Shown piece after piece: positions 18,346-63,336 of a stretch of 64,000 nucleotides of DNA. Numbering within the stretch: the stretch's first letter is position 1; each line of letters starts with the position of its first letter. The stretch is from Anolis carolinensis. Lineage: Eukaryota. A program made the position numbers and the translations under genes. The notes below the pieces were generated by a model. It searched no databases. It was given only the letters and a program-made list of their open reading frames with translations, and was not told the origin of the DNA. Location of the stretch: assembly GCF_035594765.1 (NCBI RefSeq), contig NC_085842.1, positions 295,105,749-295,169,748 of the forward strand, in the 5' to 3' direction.

Positions 18346-19637
18346 ACAAAGGCAGTCCCTCGTTGTCCGAGTATGATGGTCCTCCAAGTTTAGTTTCTTG
18401 GCGGTGGGTACATAGGTATCTGTGAAGTCCTAATTTTGACCTGCATATTCTTCCACAGTGAGGGCATCTGTGGAAGGTGGTTCTGGTCAAGGTTGGCTTG
18501 ACGTGCCTTCCTCTTGGCATGTTTTTCCCTTTCGCCCTCCATTCGTGCCTCTTCAAATTCCACTGCACTGCTGGTCACAGCTGACCTCCAATTAGAGCGC
18601 TCAAGGACCCGGGCTTCCCAGTTTTCGGTGTCTATGTCACAGTTTTTGAGGTTAGCTTTATGCTCATCTTTATATCTCTTTTCCTGTCCACCAACATTCT
18701 GTTTTCTATTCTTGAGTTGGGAGTACAGTAACCACTTTGGGAGATGGTGATTGGGCATTCGGACAATGTGGCCAGTCCAACAGAGTTGATGGCGTAGGAG
18801 CATTGCTTCAGTACTGGTGGTCTTTTCTTCTTCCAGCACGCTGACATTTGTCCGCCTGTCTTCCCAAGAGATTTGCAGGATTTTTCAGAGGCAACGCTGA
18901 TGGAATCATTCCAGGAGTTGAGTGTGACATCTGTAGACAGTCCCCATTTTGCAGGCCTATAACAGGGTTGGGAGGACAACAGCTTTATAAACAACCACCT
19001 TGGTATCCCTATGGATGTCCTGATCCTCAAACATTCTCTTCTTCATTAGGAAAAATGCTAGGCTCACAGAGCTCAGGCGGTATTATATTTCAGTGTCAAT
19101 GTTGACTTTTGTGGAGAGGTGGCTGCCAAGGTAGCGGAAATGGTCAACATTTTCTAATGTTACACCATGAAACTGTATTTCTGGCATTGCAGAGGGATTG
19201 GCTGGTGCCTGCTGGAAGAGCACTTTGGTTTTCTCAATGTGCAATAAGAGGCCAAGCTTCTTGTATGGTTCTACAAATGTGTTTAGAGTGGCTTGTAGGT
19301 CTTCTTCTGAATACACACAGACAACATTATCATCGGCATTCTGGAGTTCTATAACAGATATTGTTGTGACCTTGGTTTTGGCTTTCAATCTGCTGAGGTT
19401 AAATAGCTTGCCATCTTTCCAATAGATGATTTCCACTCCGGTGGGAAGCCTCTCATCAACAAGATGAAGTATCATAGTGATGAAGATGGAAAATAAGGTT
19501 GGAGCAATAACACAATCCTGTTTGACATCTGATTCCACCTTAAATGAGTCACTTTTGGAACCATTGCTGTCCAGACTGTTGCTATCATGTCATTGTGGAG
19601 GAACTGCAGGATGTTCACAAATTGGTCAGGGTATCCA
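18346..19637 (-). mobile_element. 5'-truncated, degenerate RTE-clade LINE (RT C-half plus C-terminal zinc finger)
   Basis: ORF pieces 'VKQDCVIAPTLFSIF...ELQNADD...VDHFRYLGS', 'LCWTGHIVRM' and 'CPHCGRICRSKLGLHRYLCTH', broken by stops and frameshifts. Confidence 0.95.
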
Positions 19638-27074: not shown

Positions 27075-27640
27075 GCTTCCTTGAGAAGGGAGTTCCAGAG
27101 TAGAGGAGCAACCACCAAGAAGGCCTGTTCTCTCATTCCCAGCAACCAAGCTTGAGATGAAGGTGGGACCAAGAGAAGGGCCTCTCCTGAAGATCTCAGG
27201 GCTCGGGCAGGTTCATATAACCTTGACCTGAACTGTCTAGGGCTTTAAAGGTCATAACCAGCACTTTGAATTATGCCCAGAAACAGACTGGCAGCCAGGG
27301 GAGCTGCTGTAACAGGGGGGTTGTCTGCTCCCTACAACCAGCCCCAGTTAGCAACCTGGCTGCAGCTCTTTGGACCAAGCACTCTTCAAAGGCAGCCCCA
27401 CGTAGAGTGTGTTACAATAATCCAGACGTGATGTAACTAAGGTACATATCATTGTGGCCAGATCTGACTTCTCAAGGAATGGGTGCAGTTGGCACACAAA
27501 TTTTAATTGTGCAAAGGCGCTCATGGCCAGTGCAGATACCTGGGCCTCTACGTTCAATGCTGAGTCCAGGAGGACCCCCAAACTGCAGACCTGTGTCTTC
27601 AGGGGGAGTGTAACTCCATCCAGCACCAGCTTAAACTCTT
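27075..27640 (-). mobile_element. L2 LINE ORF2 C-terminal fragment
   Basis: ORF 'LDGVTLPLKTQVCSLGVLLDS...LVTSRLDYCNTLYVGLP'. Confidence 0.92.
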
Positions 27641-30271
27641 TTCCCTGATCTTCTGTCTGACATTTGTCTTGTCTGGAATAGCAACTCAGTGTCCTTTGAT
27701 AGATAGTGCCAAGGGATATTACTCTGGGGATGCCATTTTGCGGCATAAATTTTCATGAACTGGAGTATAGTTTGTCAGATGCAGATTATCCCCAACCAAA
27801 TACATGGCACAGAGTTCTTCTTTTGTGAATTTTGTGGGAGTCTTAAACAAAGAAAACCATTAAACATCTGGCAACCTGTATGTGTGAGAGAGAAATTGTT
27901 CAATGAAACTTCCTTTTAGTAGCACTATTAATGTAGCATAGCTGTGCCAAATGTTGAAATGATTCATTCACTAGAGCAAGGGTCTTAAAAATGTCAAATC
28001 TAAGGTACATAGAAAAGTCTGGAAGGATAAAGCAAGGGAGATCTGCTGGCAGCAGACAAGAATCATTGTAAAGGCACGGTTTTGTCAAGGAGAGAGTTCG
28101 GAGTATGTGATATAAAAGAGAACATACAGCTGGTTGGATAAAGAGGAAAGCATGGCATGGCAAATGGCATATATTTTGGGAACGATATCAAAGAGAAAGC
28201 AAAAGAGCCTTTTGGAAGCAAAGCAAATGAAAATAAGAGGAGATGAGGGAATCGATTTTATAGGTAGTACGATAAGAGGAATAATTGCTTGTGGTGTGGA
28301 TATTCATTACACCATTGTCAAACAAGATTTGCAGTTGTGTAGTGAAGCAGGAACACAGTGGAGTGAGCTTGTGCTATGCTTTGCACAGCAGGCATACCAA
28401 AGGTATCTGCCAGAGCAGAAATTGGCAGGGTTTCAATCTTTCATAAAAAGACAGCTCTGGTCTGGCATAGGTTGACTTTCATGGTAGGCTAGGTCCATGG
28501 CTAACCCAGTGACAACTCACAGCTTTGCAGGCAATCAGAGATGGAGCCCAACTCCTATAGATTCCTATGAGTTGGTCATCTCTCCACCCCAAAGTGCACC
28601 ATAGGTATAAGTCTAAGATTGTAAGCCTTTCGACTGACAGTATCAGTGCCCACTTACACAGTCCCAAACATCAGTATCCTTGTGCTGTGTTTTTCCCTGC
28701 TCAAGCATGTTTCAAAGAGTAGGTGTGTTCTTTTTGCAATTGAATGGGTGGGGAGAGACCTTAGTGGCTGGGAAACAGCATAGGGCATCCAGGCAGACTC
28801 AGATTGCAGCAGGGTAAAAAAGAACAGCTGTCTCACTTGCACATCTTCTATGTACACATAGATCTGGGAAGGAAAACAGGTCCTGTTTCTTCTTTGCTGC
28901 AGGTATGCACCTAAATGTTGTACAAGTGTCCCGTGCCCTCCCTTGGTCACTAAATAGCCACTGGGGCACAATTCACACAGAAGTCTGCCTTCTGCATGGA
29001 AACAACACATCTGCACAGACTGAACATTACACTAAATGCAGGATCTCAGCCATAGCCTGTAATTTCTTGGACAAGGAAGAAAAGATGGAATAGAAACATC
29101 ATAAAATAATGTATTGATAAGCAATTAGCAGTCATATTTCAACACTCCGGAATGTAATGTTATCCACGTTGAAACCCCAAATACGCTTACTGTTACTTCA
29201 AAGTGAATCCCTTTGAACTGAAGAAGGATTACTTCTGTATATAAACATGTAGGTTTGCAATCTTATTTAGATATGTCACTTTGCCACTTCTTTCCTTTGG
29301 GCTTGTTTTTTTTCCCTGCTTGAGTTGCTCAAGCTTTTCTTTATATGAATACTCATGGGAGGAAATTAAGTTTAATCTACTTTGCCTGAGTGCTTGCTAA
29401 TACGTTCCAGATAGCATCTATCACTGTAATGGTATAAATGCTCAATGTTTTAATTATGAATCAAATCATCATAAAAAACAATGTCAGTTTATGTATCCAT
29501 GTAATGAATGTGCAACAGATCTTAGAGAATACACAGGTGGTATAGAGATAACACCACAAAATATGTGCACCTTTACATAGGTTTTTACTGTTGCTTCATA
29601 CAGAATAGCCTAAAGCAGTCTTCTCCAGCTGGGTCCCAATCAAATCTTCTAGGTTAGACATCATATTAACCCCCAAAGCATGAAACTAATGGGAGTTGTA
29701 GTCCCATATATACAGTGTGTGTGTGTGTGTGTGTGTGTATTTGAGTTGCCTGTTGACCTATAAATACCATGGGGTTTTCTCTGGCATAGACACAAGTAGA
29801 AATGTATGTTTTAGTACCCATTCTCATCATAAGACTGGCGGGAGTGGCATAAAGGAATGGTGTGATAAGACCATAAATATTTCACAAGCTAATATTGGGA
29901 TCCCAGAAGGCTTGCAAGATTTGTCCTCCCCTGGGAGTCTTGCAATGGCTGAAGCACAGCCATCAGCATGCTCTTCACCCCCATCAGGCAAGTCAGCACC
30001 TCAGCAGGCGCAGTTGTCGGCCAGCTCGCTTGCCACAAAGATGCCCCCTTGACTAAGTACATTGGGGTCACATTGCATATTTCCATATTATATCTATGCA
30101 GATAAAAATGTCTTCTGGGGGTCAGAACACTGAGCTAAAGGGGATTTTATAACAAATGCATTTTAATGAAAATGTAACTTGCTCACTGTAGCAAAATTTG
30201 TAATAAGTAAAGGAGTAAATAAAATTGAACCTCTTTCCGTAAATACCCTATTAGAAATCTTCCAGAAAGAT

Positions 30272-30588
30272 AAAAGGTAAAAATTTCCCCTTGACATTAA
30301 GTCTAGTTGTGTCCGACTCTGGGGGTTGGTGCTCATCTCCATTTCTAAGCCAAAGAGCTGGCATTGTCCATAGACACCTCCAAGGTCATGTGGCTGGCAT
30401 GACTGCATGGAGCGCCGTTACCTTCCCACCGGAGCGGTACCTATTGATCTACTCCCATTTGCATGTTTTCAAACTGCTAGGTTGGCAGAAGCTGGAGCTA
30501 ACAGTGGGAGTTCACCATGCTACCTGGATTCAAACCAATGACATTTCGGTCAGCAAGTTCAGCCGCTCAGCGGTTTAACCCACTGCGC
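30272..30588 (-). mobile_element. Sauria SINE
   Basis: Full body with AGGTAA tail remnant at left and tRNA-like head at right. Confidence 0.95.
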
Positions 30589-31110
30589 AAATATGAACAT
30601 CAAAAATTGATAACATTGTATTGGTACAAATGATTAACACTTGCAAATATTTAATTGAAATAAAAGTTAAGTATTGCACATAAACACAGTATGAAAAGAT
30701 ATTAAGATAACAGCAATCATGTACAAAACAAAGTATGGATGATTCAGTTTTAACAAAATGAATGCATAATTCTGAAGGAGGATTCCTTAAAGTGATTGCA
30801 CACCAGGTATATTGTGTTCATGCTTTGGTAATCACCAAGAATTGAAAATTCCACATATAACTGTCATGATCTGTTATGCTATTGTTTTGGAGAAATATAT
30901 TTACTTAGCTAACCTTTTTGCAATCTATTATTGTTCTGTTTTTTGGGGGGGAAATCGGGTTTGGTTAATTTTTGGAGAGGAAGCTACATCTAGACTCCAG
31001 CCAGTTCTTAATTTCTGTGGTTTGAACTCTGAGCTTATCCAAAGAGTAATGAGGGAAACAAACTGATAAACTCAAAGATCACAAGTATGAAATTTGAGTT
31101 AAAAGCACAA

Positions 31111-31153
31111 TGTTTCACATTTTTATAATTCTTTCTCTTTTTTATAGGTAAGT
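31111..31153 (+). other. Recursive splice site (ratchet point) TAG|GTAAGT, junction 31147/31148
   Basis: Branch-like TTCAC (A at 31117), ~40-nt AG-free zone, tract TTCTTTCTCTTTTTTA, then TAG abutting a consensus GTAAGT. Confidence 0.75.
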
Positions 31154-31269
31154 ACTTCATTCTTTATTCTTCTTCTTTAAGCTGACAGAAAATACATGAC
31201 TTGCCTGAATTGTATTTCTAACAAAGTATATAAAAGCAACCAAATGAGTGAAATATGTTGTCTACTCAG
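31148..31269 (+). other. Putative 122-nt RS-exon (poison exon)
   Basis: Ends at strong donor CAG|GTAAGG (31270-31275). Length is not a multiple of 3; inclusion after a phase-2 exon gives an immediate TAA. Confidence 0.65.
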
Positions 31270-31927
31270 GTAAGGATTTCAAAACATTATCACAATGTCC
31301 TTGTTTATTTATGAAAGTTGGTATCAGAAAGTTTGTTTGTCAGAGTTTGTTGTGCGGAAATAGAAAATATAGTTGATTTTCATGATACATTAACTTCTGC
31401 CTCTTGACTGCCCACAAGAAAAAGAGGTGCTCTTGACTCTGCTCTGAAAGGACCAATTGGCTATTAATCATGGAAGCACACTTTCCTTCTTTGTCAAAAC
31501 AGAAGGAGGAAAGGAAATGGTTTGGAAACAAAATGTTATTGCATAGTAAGGAAACTCTGTGGCCCAAAGGTTCCAGAAACATCCCACAGTGTATTTTTAG
31601 TCTAAGATGTGTTCAACAATGACTTTAAAATTTTCTATTCTTCAGGGTCATCTTCCACATCTTTTGTGGAGAAGACCCCCAAACGCTTGTGTGTTTTGGA
31701 AAATTCTGAGGAGCATTTCTTTCAATTAATATTATTATAGGATACTATATTAACTTGTTGGATCAGATTTTTTCCTTATAGGAACTAAATTTGAATATCC
31801 AATGTATAGTTGCACCTTGCATAGGAAGATGGGTGTTGGCAAGCAGGCAGGCATCAGGGATGAGGAAAAATGCTTGGGGAAGATTACCTGTTTTAAAATT
31901 ATTGGTTTTCTATACCATATATATACT

Positions 31928-32249
31928 GATGGTGCAGCAGGTTAAACCGCTGAGCTTCTGAACTTGCTGATGGAAAGGTTGGCAGTTCGAATCCGGGGGG
32001 TGGGGTGAGCTCCCGCTGTTAGCCCCAGCTTTTGCCAACCTAACAGTTTGAAAACATGCAAATGTGAGTAGATCAATAGGTACCATTCCGGCAGGAAGGT
32101 AATGGTGCTCCATGCAGTCATACCGGCCACACAACCTTGGAGGCATCTATGGACAATGCCGGCTCTTTGGCTTAGAAATGGAGATAAGCACCAACCCTTA
32201 GAGTCAGACACAATTAGTCTTAATGTCAGGGGAAAACCTTTACCTTTAC
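31928..32249 (+). mobile_element. Sauria SINE
   Basis: tRNA-like head with GTTCGAATCC; (ACCTTT)n tail. Confidence 0.95.
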
Positions 32250-33104
32250 TATACCATGTACATTGTTTTGAGGGAGAGGGGGTATTTGCTGCTTTGCCTC
32301 AGACAGCAAAATGTCTTGTATTTGCTCTGCTTTCAGGGAAACTTGTCTGCCATTACTGAGCTTCTTAGTGGAGCACATCTGATAAACATTTGAAGAAAAA
32401 TAGGGTTCCTTAAATAGGTTTCAAAAATAGTGATGACTTTACAACATAATTTCGTCTGCTTGAGCTTCCATAATGGTCATTCACAAAGGTGGACTGAACA
32501 AAATCTCTCCCCCCGCCCCTATTTTACTATCCTTTTTCTTAACTGTTGAAGGTAGGGAGTATAACAAGAATATTTAGAGGAATAGAGTTCAGGGTTTTTA
32601 AAGGTGACAGCAGTCAGTGAGGGTGGCCACATTTTTCTTGACACCAACATGGGACAACCCTTTCCATTGCCTGACCAGTTGAAGACATGCTAGACAAGCC
32701 TATATAAAGTCCGCCTCAGATCTTATGAGAGACAGATCTAATATAGACCTCTATGAGAGGTGCACATTACATTAGCCTGCCATGTGTATTCCCTCCCTAT
32801 CCAATAGAGTTGGGAGCAGAAAGAGCAGATGTTGACTGGGGTTGGCAGAGTGAAAACTGAATATGGTTTCTGTACTTTTAATTATTATGTAGAAACAGGA
32901 ATTTCAGCAAGTGTTGGTTTAATCTGTTTATGGGACAACCAATGCTCACTTATATTCCATGTTCCACACAACTATTCAAGATAAAGAAGCCTTCTCCAGA
33001 TTTCACTCTGGCAGCCTTAGCTGCTGGTCACATTTGCATGATAGATAGAGTCCTATCTGAGATCATTTTGCTGCATACTAAGAGCTTCAGGATCAGTGTA
33101 TTAT

Positions 33105-40779: not shown

Positions 40780-43256
40780 TCCTGAACAAATCACTTTCTG
40801 GTCAGGGCTAGTATCACAGCTACAACTAACCCCTGCAGGGGTGGACCTATTAAAATGATCTGCTCTCGAAGGCTAATGGATCCTTTGAGATTCCAGGAGG
40901 CCTTAGAGGGCTCTATGGCTGGCATAACTGACTATCTTGTTGAATCCCTGGTCAATAATTGGAATAAAAATCTAACCAGATCTATCAAAACAGTTGCTCC
41001 CATATGTCCTCTCCGAATTGTTACAAATCATGCTCCCGGTATACAAAGACCCTCAGGGGAAATGAAATGGCAAGAACAACTAGAGTGCAGATAGTGGAAA
41101 ACCTGACTTTTATGTGACAAGACAAGATATATTGCCTCATCACACTCGAGCATGAATCCTCTTTAAATCTGATTTCTGCCTCCTGCAGAATTTTGGGGGT
41201 TGTAGTTTGGTGAGGCCCAGGACCTGTCTGGCTGAGCTGTTTAAAGCCCCCTCCCTAAAGCGGATTTAAAGTGGATATAAATTGGATCCAAGCTCTAGTG
41301 TGATGAGGTCCATAGAGGATGTTTTCGCCCCTATAAGGTGGCAATACACGTAGCGAAGAAAGCTGTCTTCTCTGCACACATGGCACCTGCAGATTCATGT
41401 CCAGCTGAGCTGTTCAGAGTAATGAGAGGCTAAATTCAGGTGCCCTCCCCTCCAAACCCATTGCTATGTCTTTAATAAACTTTTTGCAGATAAAATCTCA
41501 CACAAAAAATGACTTAGATGATTTTATTGGAGCAGAAGTCAACGGCTAGGTGTCCAGCAACTCTGTGAGTAGGATTACACTGGATCAGTTTCAATTAGTA
41601 AGTACTGTTGATGTGGACAAGCTGCTAGGGCAAGTAAGGAGGAAAACCTGCATTCTTTATCCCTGTCCTTCTTCGCTGATCATCCAGGGAGAGAATGCAG
41701 TGAAATCTCAAATAAAATAAATTATCAGTGCATTTCGCAGGGAAGGGAATTTTCCACCTTGTTTAGAAGAAGTAGTAGTTAGACCACTGCTGAAAAACCC
41801 TGGATCCCTTGGACCTTAATAATTACAGACCAGTGTCTAACCTTCTTTTTTTGGGGCAAGGTGTTTGAGAAGGTGGTTGCTCTCTAATTCCAGACATACT
41901 TCCTTGACCTATTTCAAACTGGCTTCAGAGCAGGATACGGAGTTGAGACTGCTTGGTCGCCTTAGTGGATGATCTTCATCTTAACATGGACAAGGAGTGT
42001 TTATCCCTGTTGGTGCATTTAGATTTCTCAGCTGCTTTTGATACCATCAACCATGGTGTCCTTCTGGAATGTCTTGAGGGTTTAGGAATCAGAGGTACTG
42101 TGTTGCTATGGTTCCAGCTGTACCTCTCAGACAGCTTCCAAATGGTGGTGCTTGGGGATAGCAGCTGCTCAAAATAGGAGATGTTATATAGCATCCCACA
42201 AATTGCCATTCTATCCCCAATGCTTTTTAACATTGGCATGAAACAGCTGGGAGAGATCATATGGAGGCGTGGGGCGGGGTGCTACAAATATATTTCTCCA
42301 TGCCTTCAAAATCAGCTCTTGCTAACATGTTCTCTGAAGGAAGCAATGGGCTGGATGAGGAAGAACAAATTGGAACTGAATCCAGACAAAACAGAAGTGC
42401 TTGCCATGAAGAGTCCTAATCTGCGGATGGAGATATGTCAGCCAGGTCTGGATGGGGTTACACTCCTTCTGAAAGACTGTGTTCACAGTTCCAAGACTGT
42501 AGGAATGCTCCTGGATCTGTCTCTTCAAATGTCAGCTCTGATAGATGTGATGGTCAGGAATGCTTACTACCAGCTTCGGCTGACCTGCCAGCTGTCCCCC
42601 TTCCTAGAATCCGAGGACCTGAAGATGGTAGTACATGCACTGGTAACCTCAAGGTTGGGCTTCTGCAATGCGCTTTACATTGGGCTACCTCTGTACCAAG
42701 TTTAGAAACTCCAATTTGTTCAAAATGCAGCAGCCAGATTGGTCACAGGAACACCAAGGAATAAGCATGTTACACCTATTCTAAAGTCGCTCCACTGGTT
42801 GCCAGTTTTTTTCTGGGCAAAGTACAAAGCGTTGGTTTTGAGTTTTAAAGCTAGGGCTTGGGTCCAGGTTACCTGCAGGATTGCCCTCTCCCCTACAATT
42901 TGCCCCAAACACTTAGGTCCTCTGAGGGGCATATATTCTAACCTGCCAGAACCTGACTGGCAACTGTTAGCCAGAGGACCTTCTCAGCAGCTGCCCCAAG
43001 ACTGTGGAATGACTTGCTGGAAGAGCTCCGACAGCTAGATCAGCTGTCAGAATTTAAGACACAACTGAAGATCCATCTCTTCTGGCAAATCTACACAGTC
43101 AATTTTAAGTTGTGCATTTTAATCTGCACTTTATCCATGGATTTTAACTCATATTTTAACTCTGTGTATGTATTTGTATGTCTTTTAACCGCATTATATT
43201 TCTTGCTTTAATGATGTTGTATCCCGCCTCAACCCACAGGGAGAGGCAGGTATTAA

Positions 43257-52876: not shown

Positions 52877-53001
52877 ATGAGTTTGCCATCCAGCTGTGAG
52901 CACCTGACTCTGGAGAAAGTGGCTAGATTCCGAAGCGCCTTCATTCACGGATCACCCTATGCTATTAACAAGCCCATTGATATTAAGCAGCAAAGGAGAC
53001 G
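52877..53001 (+). CDS. PDE4D: Isoform-specific first coding exon of a long PDE4 isoform (MSLPSSCEHLTLEKVARFRSAFIHGSPYAINKPIDIKQQRR-R)
   Basis: AAAATG start; 41 codons plus CG, then donor GTAACT (phase 2, fits the R-FDVDNG junction of the shared exon). The 'MSLP...GSPxAxNxPIDI..RRR' pattern is one I recall from vertebrate PDE4 N-termini. Confidence 0.78.
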
Positions 53002-54780
53002 GTAACTTGGTTTCTCTTTCCTCTTCTGTTATTTTCAATAACCCTTCCTATTGCAAACAGTGTGCTGCTTTCTGGTCTTTAGTGTCTTGAATTATTTTGA
53101 ATATGTTATGTGAGGGGAACAGTCACAGTTGCCATTGCCACTTATTTGGACTTGAAAAATGGGATTGGGAAATTATTATTGCATTTTAAGGTGTCTGAAA
53201 AAGCCACACATAACTTGCTTTGAATGCTTGTTGATGAATTCGTATGTAAAAGGATGAATGATAAGGGAGACAAAGCAGCCATAAGTAAATCCTATTGACT
53301 TGAATAGGATTGATGCATTGATGTAACTGGAGAAACGGTTAGAGCCAAATATAATGCCCAGTCATTGTTCCCATCCTTTGTTCACACAGACCAGCTATTT
53401 CAAGGGGAAGCAATACCAAAGTTATGTTTTAAATTAAAAGGTCAGTTGTCAGGATCCAAAGAGCTGCCCAGTTGAGCTTGCCTAAAAGGACTTTAGGTTT
53501 GTACTTCTCATATGTTGCTGGGAAAACCATTTTTTCAAATGGAAGTGATTTTCAACAGGATTTTTTTAAAAAAAATTAAAATCTTATTCCGACGAAAAAT
53601 AAAATTGTTGTTGCCATTGCTGTTGCACAATCAATGTACACAGCATAGTTTCTTATAGAATGGTATAAGCAACATGGAGAGGCCTCTGCTTTCGGGAAGC
53701 TTACACTATAACAGAGCTGTTGATATGACATGGGGGAGTTCAAATTAGCCCTGATGTTAGAAATGGGCCAAAAAATATAAAACTGCCCATAAGTGTAAAA
53801 ATACAATTTGCGGTCTTGCATAAAATAAAGACATAGAAGGTGCACACACTATGTCAGAGCTCAAAACACAAGGGTTCAACATTGTTTGGAATACTCTGAC
53901 CTTATTGCTGTTATAATCTGTGTGAGATATTTGGTTCAAGTACCCAAGTACTGAAATGCTTCTGTAACACTTCATAAACACCATCCTGCTATAGACGTTT
54001 CAGGAGCTCAGTGTTCCCACAGTTTTTCACACGTTTGCCTACTTACTTTCTGTTGTTGTTATTGTTTTCTCCCAACACACACCCATGCATGAAAACCTAT
54101 GATTTCTTAAACACTAGGTTGGGGGATTTATTCTTGGACTTCGTAGGAGTTTAAAAGTGAGACTTTATTTTTTATTCTGTTGGTAGGTATCAAAATTCAG
54201 AATAAACATTCTTTTTAAAAAATGTCCAGTGAGTTTGTTACATGCAAAAAAGCTATGGCTTTAATATGAAATTGAAATCTCCTGAGGAAGAGAGAATGGC
54301 TGGGATTCTATATCACCTGTTTGGTTAAGTATACGTAATGATCATTAACTTAATTTAATGATTAACTTAATGAACATGGCAATAGAGTCATAATAATCAC
54401 TAGTGATGGTGAATATGAAACATTTACAGATGAGTAAATCTAGGTAACAATTTCATGCTCACAATTGTTATTTAGTCATGATTTTGACACTATTGCAACA
54501 AAAATATCCACCCCACAATCTTACTTTACATGGGGAAAAGGAGATCCAGTCTGCATGAGTAAATGACATTTCACTCAGATTTGAGGTGTTGGGTAACCAT
54601 TCTCCTTAATGGACTTCTTAGGGCCTATTCACATTACATAATTATAGCACTATGTTTCCATATTAACTCCCATGATTCCATTATGTGGAATCCTGAGGTT
54701 TGCAGCCTGGTTTTTGTTTTGTTTTGTTGGATGGGGGATGGAGTTGGCTGTTTCGGATAAAAAGAGGCCAAAAATATGTC

Positions 54781-59180: not shown

Positions 59181-60793
59181 ATACAATACTACAAAAGGAA
59201 TATTATTCTCAAAGTGATTGTTTCTGTGTAGTAAAAGTCACCGAATGCATTTCAGAAAATAGTATTCTTCCATGAAGGGCAGACTGATAAAATATGTAAA
59301 GTCAGCTTTCCCAGATGAAATTAATAACAGTTTTGTGCCTAATGAATACACACGGGGACTCTGAGAACTGTTGGTATTGCTTCATACTTGGAACTACCTT
59401 TTCATTTCATTGTTTAAATGTAAGGCCAGGACAGATGTCACTGGTGGGAAGCCATGTGACCAAAGCTGCCACATGCTAATGACAGTACCTGATGTGGGAG
59501 CACAAAGTGTACCTGGAACCTTTGAGACTTGAATATAGTAATATCTCTTCTTTTTTAAAAAAACATTTTTATAATCAGGAACCACTGGCTAATAGCACTA
59601 GTCTTGGAGCAGAAAGACCTTGCAATACAGGATAATTTCATGCCATCAACCTTCTCGTTGTCTTGTCAAAATGGTATCTATGGAAATGAATCAATACTAA
59701 TAGCCTGTTGGTAGCAGCCGAGGTCCAAACCATGGTGTAGTGATTAGCTGTGCTTTAGTGCCTCTAAAAATAGAAAGAAATAATAAATGGGGGCCAAGAT
59801 ACTTCCTGTATACAATAGAATGAGCTTTATTGAAGAAAACATGTTTTGAGAGATAGAAATTTTTACAAATGGGAACTGTGAGCAAACAAACATTATTGGA
59901 AGTTTGGAAATGGACCAAGAAAAGTGCAGCTCACCCCTTTTCTGAAGCAAGGGCCCTGGATTGTGTCCTATTTTAAAAAATTTACCAATAGCAGATAAAC
60001 ACACCTCTTCCAGTAAAAGCATTATTTGGTGGTTGGGAAATAGAATTAGTCCTTTTAAAATTATAACATCCTCCCTCCCTTTTTGCAGAATCAATGAAGC
60101 AATTTCTATCTGTTGAAAGGTTGACATCTCTTAAACTGTAATTTCTTATGATACTCTAGTGTCTAAATGATAGTTTTCCTCCAGCTGCCAACATTTAGAA
60201 AAAATGATGACTTTTCTTTTGGTATAAAGAGAAAATACCATTACATTTTTTATCGCACTTCTGTCAATTTAATATGTGGACTGGGAGTTCTTCTTGGATT
60301 GATGATGGCATAGTTGAGGAAAGAAACATTACTTTATTGCTGCATGCAGTCCTTTGTTCCTTCTGAATTGTCTTGTAAACTTAAACCAAAGAGAGGCATT
60401 ATCCTTACTATTGGATTGACCTTTTGGCATTCAGATAGATTGTACTTTAAAGTTCAGTAAATTTTAAATTATGTTGACAGACAGGAACTCAATTTGATGT
60501 AAATATGTCTATATTCACAGGAGCCTCCCAATTACTTTGGAGTCAGGGTATATCTACATGATGAAATTGATAGATGTAGCAGAAATTAATTTATTGTTAG
60601 ATAAGAGAATTTTGCAAAGACTGGAAATCCCTTACAGACTTTTGGCAAAAAAGAAAGAAAAGCAAAGGACTTGAAAAGTTTTGGATTTGATGACTAAAAA
60701 AATAGGCCATTAAAAGAGGGGATTATGTGGAAATTTCATTGAGAGAGGCATGAATAACTATATGTCTAAGATATAACCATGCTGGTCTGGAAT

Positions 60794-61324: not shown

Positions 61325-63336
61325 TATATGAGACTTGGTATCTGCTAGGATTTGGTTCCTGGCTGTCCCATGGATACAAAAATCTGTGTGATCCAACAGC
61401 CAGTAGAGTGTCTGCTGTGGACTCATCTTGTTGTGTTTCAAATAATATAATAATAACAACAACAACTATTTATACCCCGCTCCATCTCCCGAAGGACTCG
61501 GAGCGGCTTACACTGGGACAAGCCCAAAACAGTATTACATCAATAAAACAGTAACACAATAAAGTAGATAGCCAGTAACACAATAGATACGTAATAGCTA
61601 GCTAGCTTTGAGGTAGGAATTCATTTAAAAGGCCAATTTAAGAATGCCTGGATTGCCTGAACCAAGTCTACTGTGCCCATACTCTCTGTAAAAAATAACA
61701 ATAAGAAAACATTAGATGCTTGGGAGTAGTAGTTAGTTGGTAATACAAAAAAAAAAAACCCAAAGAGTTTGATGGCAGATTAAAGACAAAGCAGTTTCAA
61801 ATGATATAATTCATTGTGATCGAAATAGGCATGTGCCAAATAAGATCTGTTAGTCTTTATCACCCAGCAAGACCGCTTATTTTGTTTGTTCCAAGATGCC
61901 TATATGAGATCAAACCACATTTACTTTTAAAGAAAGCTATTTTAAAATATGTGTTTCTCCAATAAGTTTGTTTAAGTGGGCCAACAAGTTCTTTGGTTGT
62001 AGTTGTTCATTATTCGATTCCCAAAGTAGAAAATATGCACAATAAACACTAAACTCACCTAGCCTACAGGTATGAACTGTGTGCTATGTTAATAAATTAC
62101 TAGAGAGATATTAACAGTTTTAGCCAGCCTCGCCCCAAACTGAAACCGGCCAAAGCTGTGATAAATTGCAAGATACATGAATTGTAAGCACAGAATAGGA
62201 TTGTATATTGCCTTAACATCTCATTAATTCTCAATAGCAGCTTAGACAAACAGCCATTAGCTGAGGTTATTGGATCTTAAGACTTAACCAACAAATGTCT
62301 TGCAAAAAGCAAATATTAACGACCAGCTACAGAGCAACAGATGTTGGCCATTGGATAAGCCTTGCACTTTTATGCTTATTGCATTCCCATTATTAAATTC
62401 AAAGCCTCTAGTGTTTAAATAGCATTACAGTTATGAAACAAATGAAAACAAATACCTAGAAAAACCAAGATTAAGAGTAACATTTTGGGGGAGAGTTCAG
62501 AAATGTCCAGTTTGTTTGAAGAATCTAAAGAAGGGTAAATTTAATGTATCTATCCTGAACCAATTGTAGTCCAAAAGGCTTTTTTCATATCATTTTTAGC
62601 TCAGCAGACTACAGTTCGCAATTCGCCTGGGCTGTGAAATTCACAGCCCATACAATGTCGCTTTTCCAAGCTCTGAACCAGACAAATACACTCTCAATAT
62701 AAGATTGTTTTCTAACCCTCACCTCAGCAGCTCTGGGCAACCCTATGTAAACCTGATTTTACTGTGCAGTCACTCTTTATTAAAACCAAATAGCCTGTTT
62801 TAAAAACCCTCTTCAAAGCATTTAGTAACTAATTAAGACACTGCTCTAACAAGCATTTATAAATGGGCATTAAGAGACAGCTTTGAAATTTACAAGATCA
62901 AATAAGGCAGCTATCCAAAGCAGAGCACTGTGTAATTTCTGTTTAGAATTAATAAAAGCCTAAAAGCTTTTGGTTTTTGGCCTACCACCTATATGTTACA
63001 TATAATTATGTGGTTCTTTTTCTTTGGATTTTTAAAAGCTAGTCAAGGTGCCAAATGCTTTCCCCAAATAGGTTCAGCACCTTGGATACTTCCTTTAAAC
63101 ATTTAGGCTGAAGCCTAGCATGAATTCACCATCCTGAGTTGGGTGCCTTCAATAAGAAAACAACTCCAGAAGAAAGGCTTTTTGAGCAGAAAGATGTCTT
63201 TCAAGAAAAATATTAAGCAGCTCCTTACAAAGATTTTGTTCAGAAATCTAACCTTCTATTAGTCCTTGTGCATTTTGGGAGTTTGGAGAGGGACCAACAT
63301 TATGTAAAAATACCATATTGCTATATGGCATGTATA

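What the first reader, a model, noticed from the sequence alone, without database searches (positions are those of the whole stretch)
31105..31275. Recursive splice site with a poison RS-exon in a lizard giant intron
Seen: branch-like TTCAC, a ~40-nt AG-free pyrimidine tract, TAG immediately followed by a perfect GTAAGT, a second U/C-rich tract at 31155-31178, and another strong donor CAG|GTAAGG 122 nt later. Known: this RS-site plus RS-exon layout defines vertebrate recursive splicing, and PDE4D was among the human genes reported with such sites (Sibley et al. 2015; Duff et al. 2015). Inference: PDE4 long-form first exons end in phase 2, so joining one here either rebuilds a strong donor (e.g. 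ACG|GTAAGT, recursive skip) or includes the exon and reads NNG-TAA at once (NMD). Only promoters upstream of 31 kb face this checkpoint; the 52.9-kb exon bypasses it.
Basis: partly seen in the sequence, partly recalled or inferred. Interest (0 to 1): 0.85.

Follow-up and report, generated by a model that had tools for sequence, protein, structure and literature searches.

The report
Lizard PDE4D recursive splice site
A hidden splice site in the giant intron of a lizard PDE4D gene really is used to cut the intron out in steps; it is most likely the lizard copy of a site already mapped in human and mouse, so it extends a known mechanism to reptiles rather than revealing a new one.

Summary
The finding holds. 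Window 31105-31275 has a 40-nt AG-free tract, TAG|GTAAGT at 31148 and a second donor CAG|GTAAGG at 31270. The exon at 52877-53001 identifies the gene as PDE4D. In one public run (a guessed RNA run, contigs only, depth 3.5-5.3) a PDE4D4-type first exon is joined exactly to 31148. This rebuilds ACG|GTAAGT and reads a stop at once. A second contig joins the 122-nt exon end to foreign sequence that most simply begins with another GTAAGT, probably the next recursive site. The motif, a branch-like A at -30, an exonic block and a downstream donor are conserved in woodrat, 26 kb upstream of the same exon. Flanking sequence and exon order fit the middle PDE4D recursive site already catalogued in mouse (chr13:109550007) and human (chr5:58764261). 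So the mechanism and probably the site are known; the lizard evidence is new as far as I found. Not shown: the second cut at the rebuilt donor, saw-tooth coverage, and nonsense-mediated decay. The in-frame stop is a by-product of GTAAGT itself, and the 52.9-kb promoter probably meets its own site downstream, so a promoter checkpoint is unproven. The scan noted the flanking SINE pair on this window only.

The parts
31114..31118 (+). Branch-point-like motif, A at 31117, 30 nt before the acceptor end; use not tested
   Evidence: a U-n-A-C motif with its A also at -30 lies at L001:22835-22838 in woodrat
31119..31144 (+). Polypyrimidine tract inside a 40-nt AG-free zone; a 4-nt insertion allele exists behind 31133
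   Evidence: table 4
31145..31147 (+). 3' splice site TAG, used: a PDE4D4-type first exon is joined to 31148
   Evidence: run X6 record 2 and table 7
31148..31153 (+). Recursive donor half GTAAGT; after the join it reads ACG|GTAAGT; contains the phase-2 stop TAA at 31149-31151
   Evidence: MaxEnt 11.81 for this 9-mer in PMC8797253 S4
31148..31269 (+). RS-exon, 122 nt, 30% G+C like its flanks, stops in all three frames, shifts frame on phase-2 entry
31155..31178 (+). Second U/C-rich tract followed by inner AGs at 31180-31181 and 31187-31188; use of these inner acceptors not seen
31181..31208 (+). Purine-rich block conserved with woodrat; candidate exon-definition enhancer (inference)
   Evidence: best match in 53 kb of woodrat DNA lies 30 nt after the woodrat motif
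31267..31275 (+). Downstream donor CAG|GTAAGG; probably used in one contig
   Evidence: record 4; MaxEnt 11.08 for this 9-mer; woodrat has CTG|GTAAGC at 130 nt
30273..30586 (+). Upstream arm of an inverted SINE pair (Sauria-SINE-like, named from memory and from note s1-528389)
31934..32247 (-). Downstream arm of the inverted SINE pair, 85% complementary, 1347 nt between arms
52877..53001 (+). Alternative first coding exon of PDE4D (41 codons plus 2 bases, phase 2, donor at 53002); landmark for gene identity and synteny

Best explanation
This is a vertebrate-type recursive splice site with a cryptic RS-exon in the long 5' intron of PDE4D, orthologous to the middle of the three known mammalian PDE4D sites. 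Step 1 (shown): transcripts from upstream promoters splice their first exon to the acceptor at 31147. Step 2 (shown as sequence, inferred as function): the join rebuilds a very strong donor, ACG|GTAAGT for a PDE4D4-type exon. Step 3 (inferred from the known mechanism): this donor usually beats the exon's own donor at 31270, so the 122 nt leave with the next piece of intron and nothing stays in the mRNA. Step 4 (one contig; fate inferred): sometimes the 31270 donor wins, the exon is carried on to the next site, and a stop right after the first exon should send that RNA to decay.
For:: run X6 holds a 151-nt contig made of 23 foreign letters plus 31147-31274 with no mismatch; the foreign letters read S-S-F-Q-G-Y-R-R, against SSFQGLRR at the end of PDE4D4-type first exons, and no such exon end is in the window. 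The same run has unspliced read-through past 31270 and a contig that leaves the window at 31274; the only strong tract + AG|GTAAGT in 49 kb of woodrat DNA upstream of the same landmark exon; the exon body alone, without the motif, finds its best match right behind it (0 of 4947 and 9 of 4955 controls reach the score); the woodrat tract resembles mouse chr13:109550007 more than the other two mouse sites (by eye); another such motif lies downstream of the landmark exon in turtle and arapaima, and no PDE4D3-type exon lies within -52 to +33 kb, giving the order D3, this site, landmark exon, third site, D8, D9; human sites at 58981769, 58764261, 58678237 with saw-tooth.
Against: Both junctions come from one run at depth 3.5-4.5; three other runs show only unspliced pieces. 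Runs are guessed RNA and contigs only, so no level, strand or saw-tooth. An upstream junction is also the first step of ordinary cassette-exon splicing. The two donors are nearly equal (11.81 against 11.08). Assignment to the middle site rests on order, spacing and a 20-nt low-complexity tract, not on a direct alignment to mouse or human.
Confidence: 0.8

Rival explanations
1. It is mainly a conserved poison cassette exon: it is either included through both outer splice sites (leading to decay) or skipped by direct splicing, and the rebuilt donor is little used.
For: Downstream donor almost as strong as the rebuilt one; both outer junctions are seen in one run at similar depth, 4.5 and 3.5; stops in all frames; an inverted SINE pair could tune inclusion.
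Against: GTAAGT plus the next four bases are identical in woodrat while exon length (122 against 79 or 130 nt) and frame are not kept; the likely mammalian orthologue shows saw-tooth; the downstream partner looks intronic, not the coding exon that begins FDVDNG.
Confidence: 0.12
2. It is a real recursive site but not one of the three catalogued PDE4D sites (a fourth site), or it matches the first or third site.
For: No direct alignment to mouse or human was made. The mouse table lists ACG for the exon ending at 109442353, the same three letters that end the landmark exon, which would put the middle site downstream of it.
Against: That mouse exon sits where PDE4D3 is expected from the human spacing, and no PDE4D3-type exon is near the landmark exon; the woodrat tract shares its TGTGTTT core and TAG with the middle mouse site only.
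Confidence: 0.1
3. The region supplies a coding piece: an 81-nt in-frame exon from the inner acceptor (31189-31269) or a new 24-codon N-terminus from ATG 31196.
For: The frame is open and ends in phase 2; the inner AG is kept in woodrat; contigs of two studies begin at 31185-31186.
Against: ATG, length and frame are not kept in woodrat; none of the roughly 110 PDE4 N-termini listed has this peptide; no junction to the inner AGs was seen.
Confidence: 0.04
4. Chance motif with stray cryptic splicing or assembly chimeras.
For: The 9-mer is expected about once per window; contig depth is low.
Against: Exact exon-end junction in the right gene and phase and positional conservation with a rodent independent of the motif.
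Confidence: 0.02

Closest known systems
Middle PDE4D recursive site: human hg19 chr5:58764261 (RS2 of Zhang et al. 2018, PMC6110456) and mouse chr13:109550007 (Moon and Zhao 2022, PMC8797253)
   Same: Same gene, same place in the order of first exons (inferred), TAG|GTAAGT, rebuilt donor ACG|GTAAGT, upstream junction evidence.
   Different: The lizard exon has a near-consensus downstream donor at 122 nt and one contig using it. The mouse table lists a weak donor (-1.09) and no downstream junctions, but it counted only joins to annotated exons, so joins to the next recursive site would be missed. The lizard has a flanking inverted SINE pair.
Vertebrate cryptic RS-exons in CADM2, NTM, LSAMP, OPCML, ANK3, CADM1 (Sibley 2015, as tabulated in PMC8797253 and discussed in PMC6224609)
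   Same: Strong acceptor directly followed by a donor, a cryptic exon ending in a competing donor, low-level inclusion.
   Different: Those inclusion junctions go to annotated exons; here the partner seems to be another intronic GTAAGT site.
Drosophila ratchet points with cryptic RS-exons (kuz, Bx, Ubx; PMC8605326)
   Same: Donor competition decides between zero-nucleotide splicing and exon inclusion; several sites in one intron.
   Different: Different lineage and genes; competition was tested there by mutation and is only inferred here.
Poison cassette exons coupled to nonsense-mediated decay
   Same: Inclusion adds a premature stop.
   Different: The exon body is only patchily conserved, and the stop is part of the donor consensus.

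Membership tests
Vertebrate recursive splice site with RS-exon | Strong 3' splice site directly followed by a 5' splice site consensus (AG|GT) | tested here: met
   MaxEntScan itself was not available, donor scores are taken from PMC8797253 for identical 9-mers
Vertebrate recursive splice site with RS-exon | Lies in a long intron of a long gene | tested here: met
   At least 31 kb to any upstream PDE4D first exon and 21.7 kb to the next; full intron length not measurable in the window
Vertebrate recursive splice site with RS-exon | Junction from an upstream exon to the site, rebuilding a donor | tested here: met
   one run, one contig, depth 4.5
Vertebrate recursive splice site with RS-exon | Downstream donor defining an RS-exon | tested here: met
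Vertebrate recursive splice site with RS-exon | Evolutionary conservation of the site | tested here: met
   woodrat; no other reptile or bird sequence reached the site
Vertebrate recursive splice site with RS-exon | Saw-tooth read coverage at the site | not testable with these tools
   Only contigs were available; in X6 and X9 contigs lie only downstream of the site, which is suggestive at most
Vertebrate recursive splice site with RS-exon | Second cut at the rebuilt donor (lariat starting at the site), exon mostly absent from mRNA | not testable with these tools
   No lariat or raw-read data
Orthologue of the middle mammalian PDE4D site | Aligns to mouse chr13:109550007 / human chr5:58764261 | tested here: inconclusive
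   Indirect: woodrat orthologue, tract resemblance and exon order; no direct alignment
Poison exon (splicing-coupled decay) | Premature stop on inclusion | tested here: met
Poison exon (splicing-coupled decay) | Included form reaches mature mRNA and rises when decay is blocked | not testable with these tools
   No such data

The most novel reading that the evidence does not exclude
The RS-exon's own donor is used at an appreciable rate and splices onto the next recursive site, so a stop-carrying exon is relayed from site to site. With near-equal donors, the last three bases of each upstream first exon, and perhaps the lizard-specific inverted SINE duplex, would set how much RNA from each long PDE4D promoter is lost to decay. 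Published searches counted only joins to annotated exons and would miss this relay.
Probability: 0.25. Interest if true: 0.55.

Novelty: new member of a known kind. Interest (0 to 1): 0.33.

Why it matters
It gives junction-level evidence that stepwise removal of the PDE4D intron also happens in a reptile and that the site dates back at least to the amniote ancestor. I found no paper reporting recursive sites in Anolis. The one possibly new point is the exon-to-next-site join, which can be looked for at once in existing human and mouse total-RNA data.

Tried and rejected
Sibley 2015 and Duff 2015 are not held; I used Zhang 2018, Moon and Zhao 2022 and a review instead. Two pattern scans of metagenome contigs for bird or other host copies gave nothing, then 39 chance hits with no flanking similarity; none was taken for human. 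Turtle, hoatzin-sample and fish loci reach only 5-10 kb upstream of the landmark exon and do not include the site; the duck locus had no DNA. No Rfam match. No stable local fold, z = +1.14. No back-splice joint despite the inverted SINEs (table 5). Coding use of the inner frame rejected. No human sequence was compared, only published coordinates.

Full report
Observation. All described features are at the stated places: a branch-like TTCAC with its A 30 nt before the acceptor end, a 40-nt AG-free zone, TAG|GTAAGT with G at 31148, a second U/C tract, and CAG|GTAAGG at 31270. The bare 9-mer is expected about once per window. The composite is rarer, 0.043 per strand in local shuffles, but one also occurs on the minus strand. 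The motif alone therefore does not prove function.

Gene. The exon at 52877-53001 encodes 41 residues plus two bases. Its relatives are N-termini of PDE4D in duck, deer, seal, catfish and arapaima, followed by FDVDNG and the UCR domain in the duck and mammal proteins. No PDE4D3, D4, D5, D7, D8 or D9-type first exon is in the window. All long-form first exons join the same next exon, so they share phase 2 (inference). The species is probably the green anole, taken from earlier scan notes and not tested by me.

Use. Fifteen runs of one organism hold the stretch; none is on record as RNA. I laid four of them on 30600-31920. Run X6 has three contigs. The first is 23 foreign letters plus 31147-31274 without mismatch, depth 4.5. 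With the shared G the foreign letters read S-S-F-Q-G-Y-R-R and end in ACG. PDE4D4-type first exons end in SSFQGLRR. This is the predicted upstream-exon junction: it rebuilds ACG|GTAAGT and reads Arg then TAA. The second contig is unspliced read-through past 31270, depth 5.3. The third follows the window to 31274 and then continues with 24 AT-rich foreign letters starting with T, depth 3.5. The simplest reading is a splice from the donor at 31270 onto another site that begins GTAAGT; no GTAAGT context in the window matches it. A deletion allele or chimera is not excluded. The other three runs hold only unspliced pieces. Contigs give no level or strand, so saw-tooth was not testable.

Conservation. 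A woodrat contig gives 49 kb upstream of the same landmark exon. Its only strong tract + AG|GTAAGT lies 26.2 kb upstream, against 21.7 kb in the lizard. The two sites share 13 bases across the junction, a branch-like A at -30 and a purine-rich block. The lizard exon body without the motif finds its best match in all 53 kb exactly behind the woodrat motif; 0 of 4947 and 9 of 4955 control pieces reach that score. Woodrat has downstream donors at 79 and 130 nt, and its exon also carries stops. Exon length and frame are not kept.

Which known site. Human PDE4D has three sites with saw-tooth at hg19 chr5:58981769, 58764261 and 58678237; two were reported by Sibley and the middle one was new in Zhang 2018 (PMC6110456). 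Mouse has three at chr13:109333510, 109550007 and 109614417 (PMC8797253). The woodrat tract resembles the middle mouse tract and not the other two, judged by eye. A further tract + AG|GTAAGT lies 31.6 kb downstream of the landmark exon in turtle and 2.2 kb downstream in arapaima, before the D9-type exon. This fits the order D3, this site, landmark exon, third site, D8, D9. The assignment is indirect, about 85% likely.

Mechanism. Shown: first cut and rebuilt donor. Inferred from the established donor-competition model (PMC6224609, PMC8605326): the rebuilt donor (11.81) usually beats the exon donor (11.08; both values from the mouse paper's table for identical 9-mers) and the exon is removed without trace. 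The margin is small, which fits the one inclusion contig. Included RNA has a stop right after the first exon and should be degraded; this was not tested. The stop is contained in GTAAGT itself, so it is no sign of selection for a checkpoint. The mouse study found no downstream junctions for Pde4d but counted only joins to annotated exons, so a relay from one site to the next would have been missed.

SINE pair. Two 314-nt copies, 85% complementary, bracket the exon with 1347 nt between them. The family has four copies in the window, so the arrangement is somewhat unlikely by chance, but it was noticed after the fact and is absent from woodrat. No back-splice joint was seen. I laid reads only between the arms, so editing was not tested. 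I treat it as a lineage-specific accessory of unknown effect.

Limits. Loose-end letters and joined sequences were not sent to any search; no human sequence was compared; no contig was taken for human.

Verdict. A real and well-supported recursive splice site, most likely the lizard orthologue of a catalogued mammalian site. New member of a known kind, interest 0.33. The exon-to-next-site relay is the one lead worth a cheap follow-up.

Noticed in passing
window 62156-62446 and 59670-59784: Non-coding stretches conserved with turtle (77% over 292 nt; 72% over 115 nt); the first also matches the hoatzin-sample contig L007. Candidate enhancers.
   Followed up: no
L002:41697 (turtle): Tract + CAG|GTAAGT 31.6 kb after the landmark exon, with donors 41, 115 and 221 nt later; likely the third PDE4D recursive site. 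It resembles the foreign 3' letters of run X6 only loosely, by eye.
   Followed up: partly
L005:12259 (arapaima): Tract + TAG|GTAAGT 2.2 kb after the landmark-type exon and before the D9-type exon; suggests a PDE4D recursive site in a bony fish.
   Followed up: no
window 31185-31186: Contigs from two different studies (X8, X9) both begin here, close to the inner AGs at 31181 and 31188; may be filtering or loss of low-complexity words.
   Followed up: no
window 31189-31269: Open phase-2 to phase-2 frame of 81 nt with ATG at 31196; not kept in woodrat.
   Followed up: yes
window 31133: A 4-nt insertion allele lengthens the pyrimidine tract in run X5 and probably X8.
   Followed up: no
window 12272 (+) and 4990 (-): Two more pyrimidine-rich YAG|GTRAG motifs, untested.
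   Followed up: no
window 52877-53001: This PDE4D first exon is conserved from fish to mammals but is not among the six long-form exons listed in PMC2929239; I could not establish its isoform name.
   Followed up: partly
window 18390-19538, 27348-27746, 42181-42764: ORFs that look like LINE reverse-transcriptase fragments, judged from memory.
   Followed up: no
window 32840-33016: Imperfect inverted repeat, 80-nt arms, 70% complementary, 17-nt loop.
   Followed up: no
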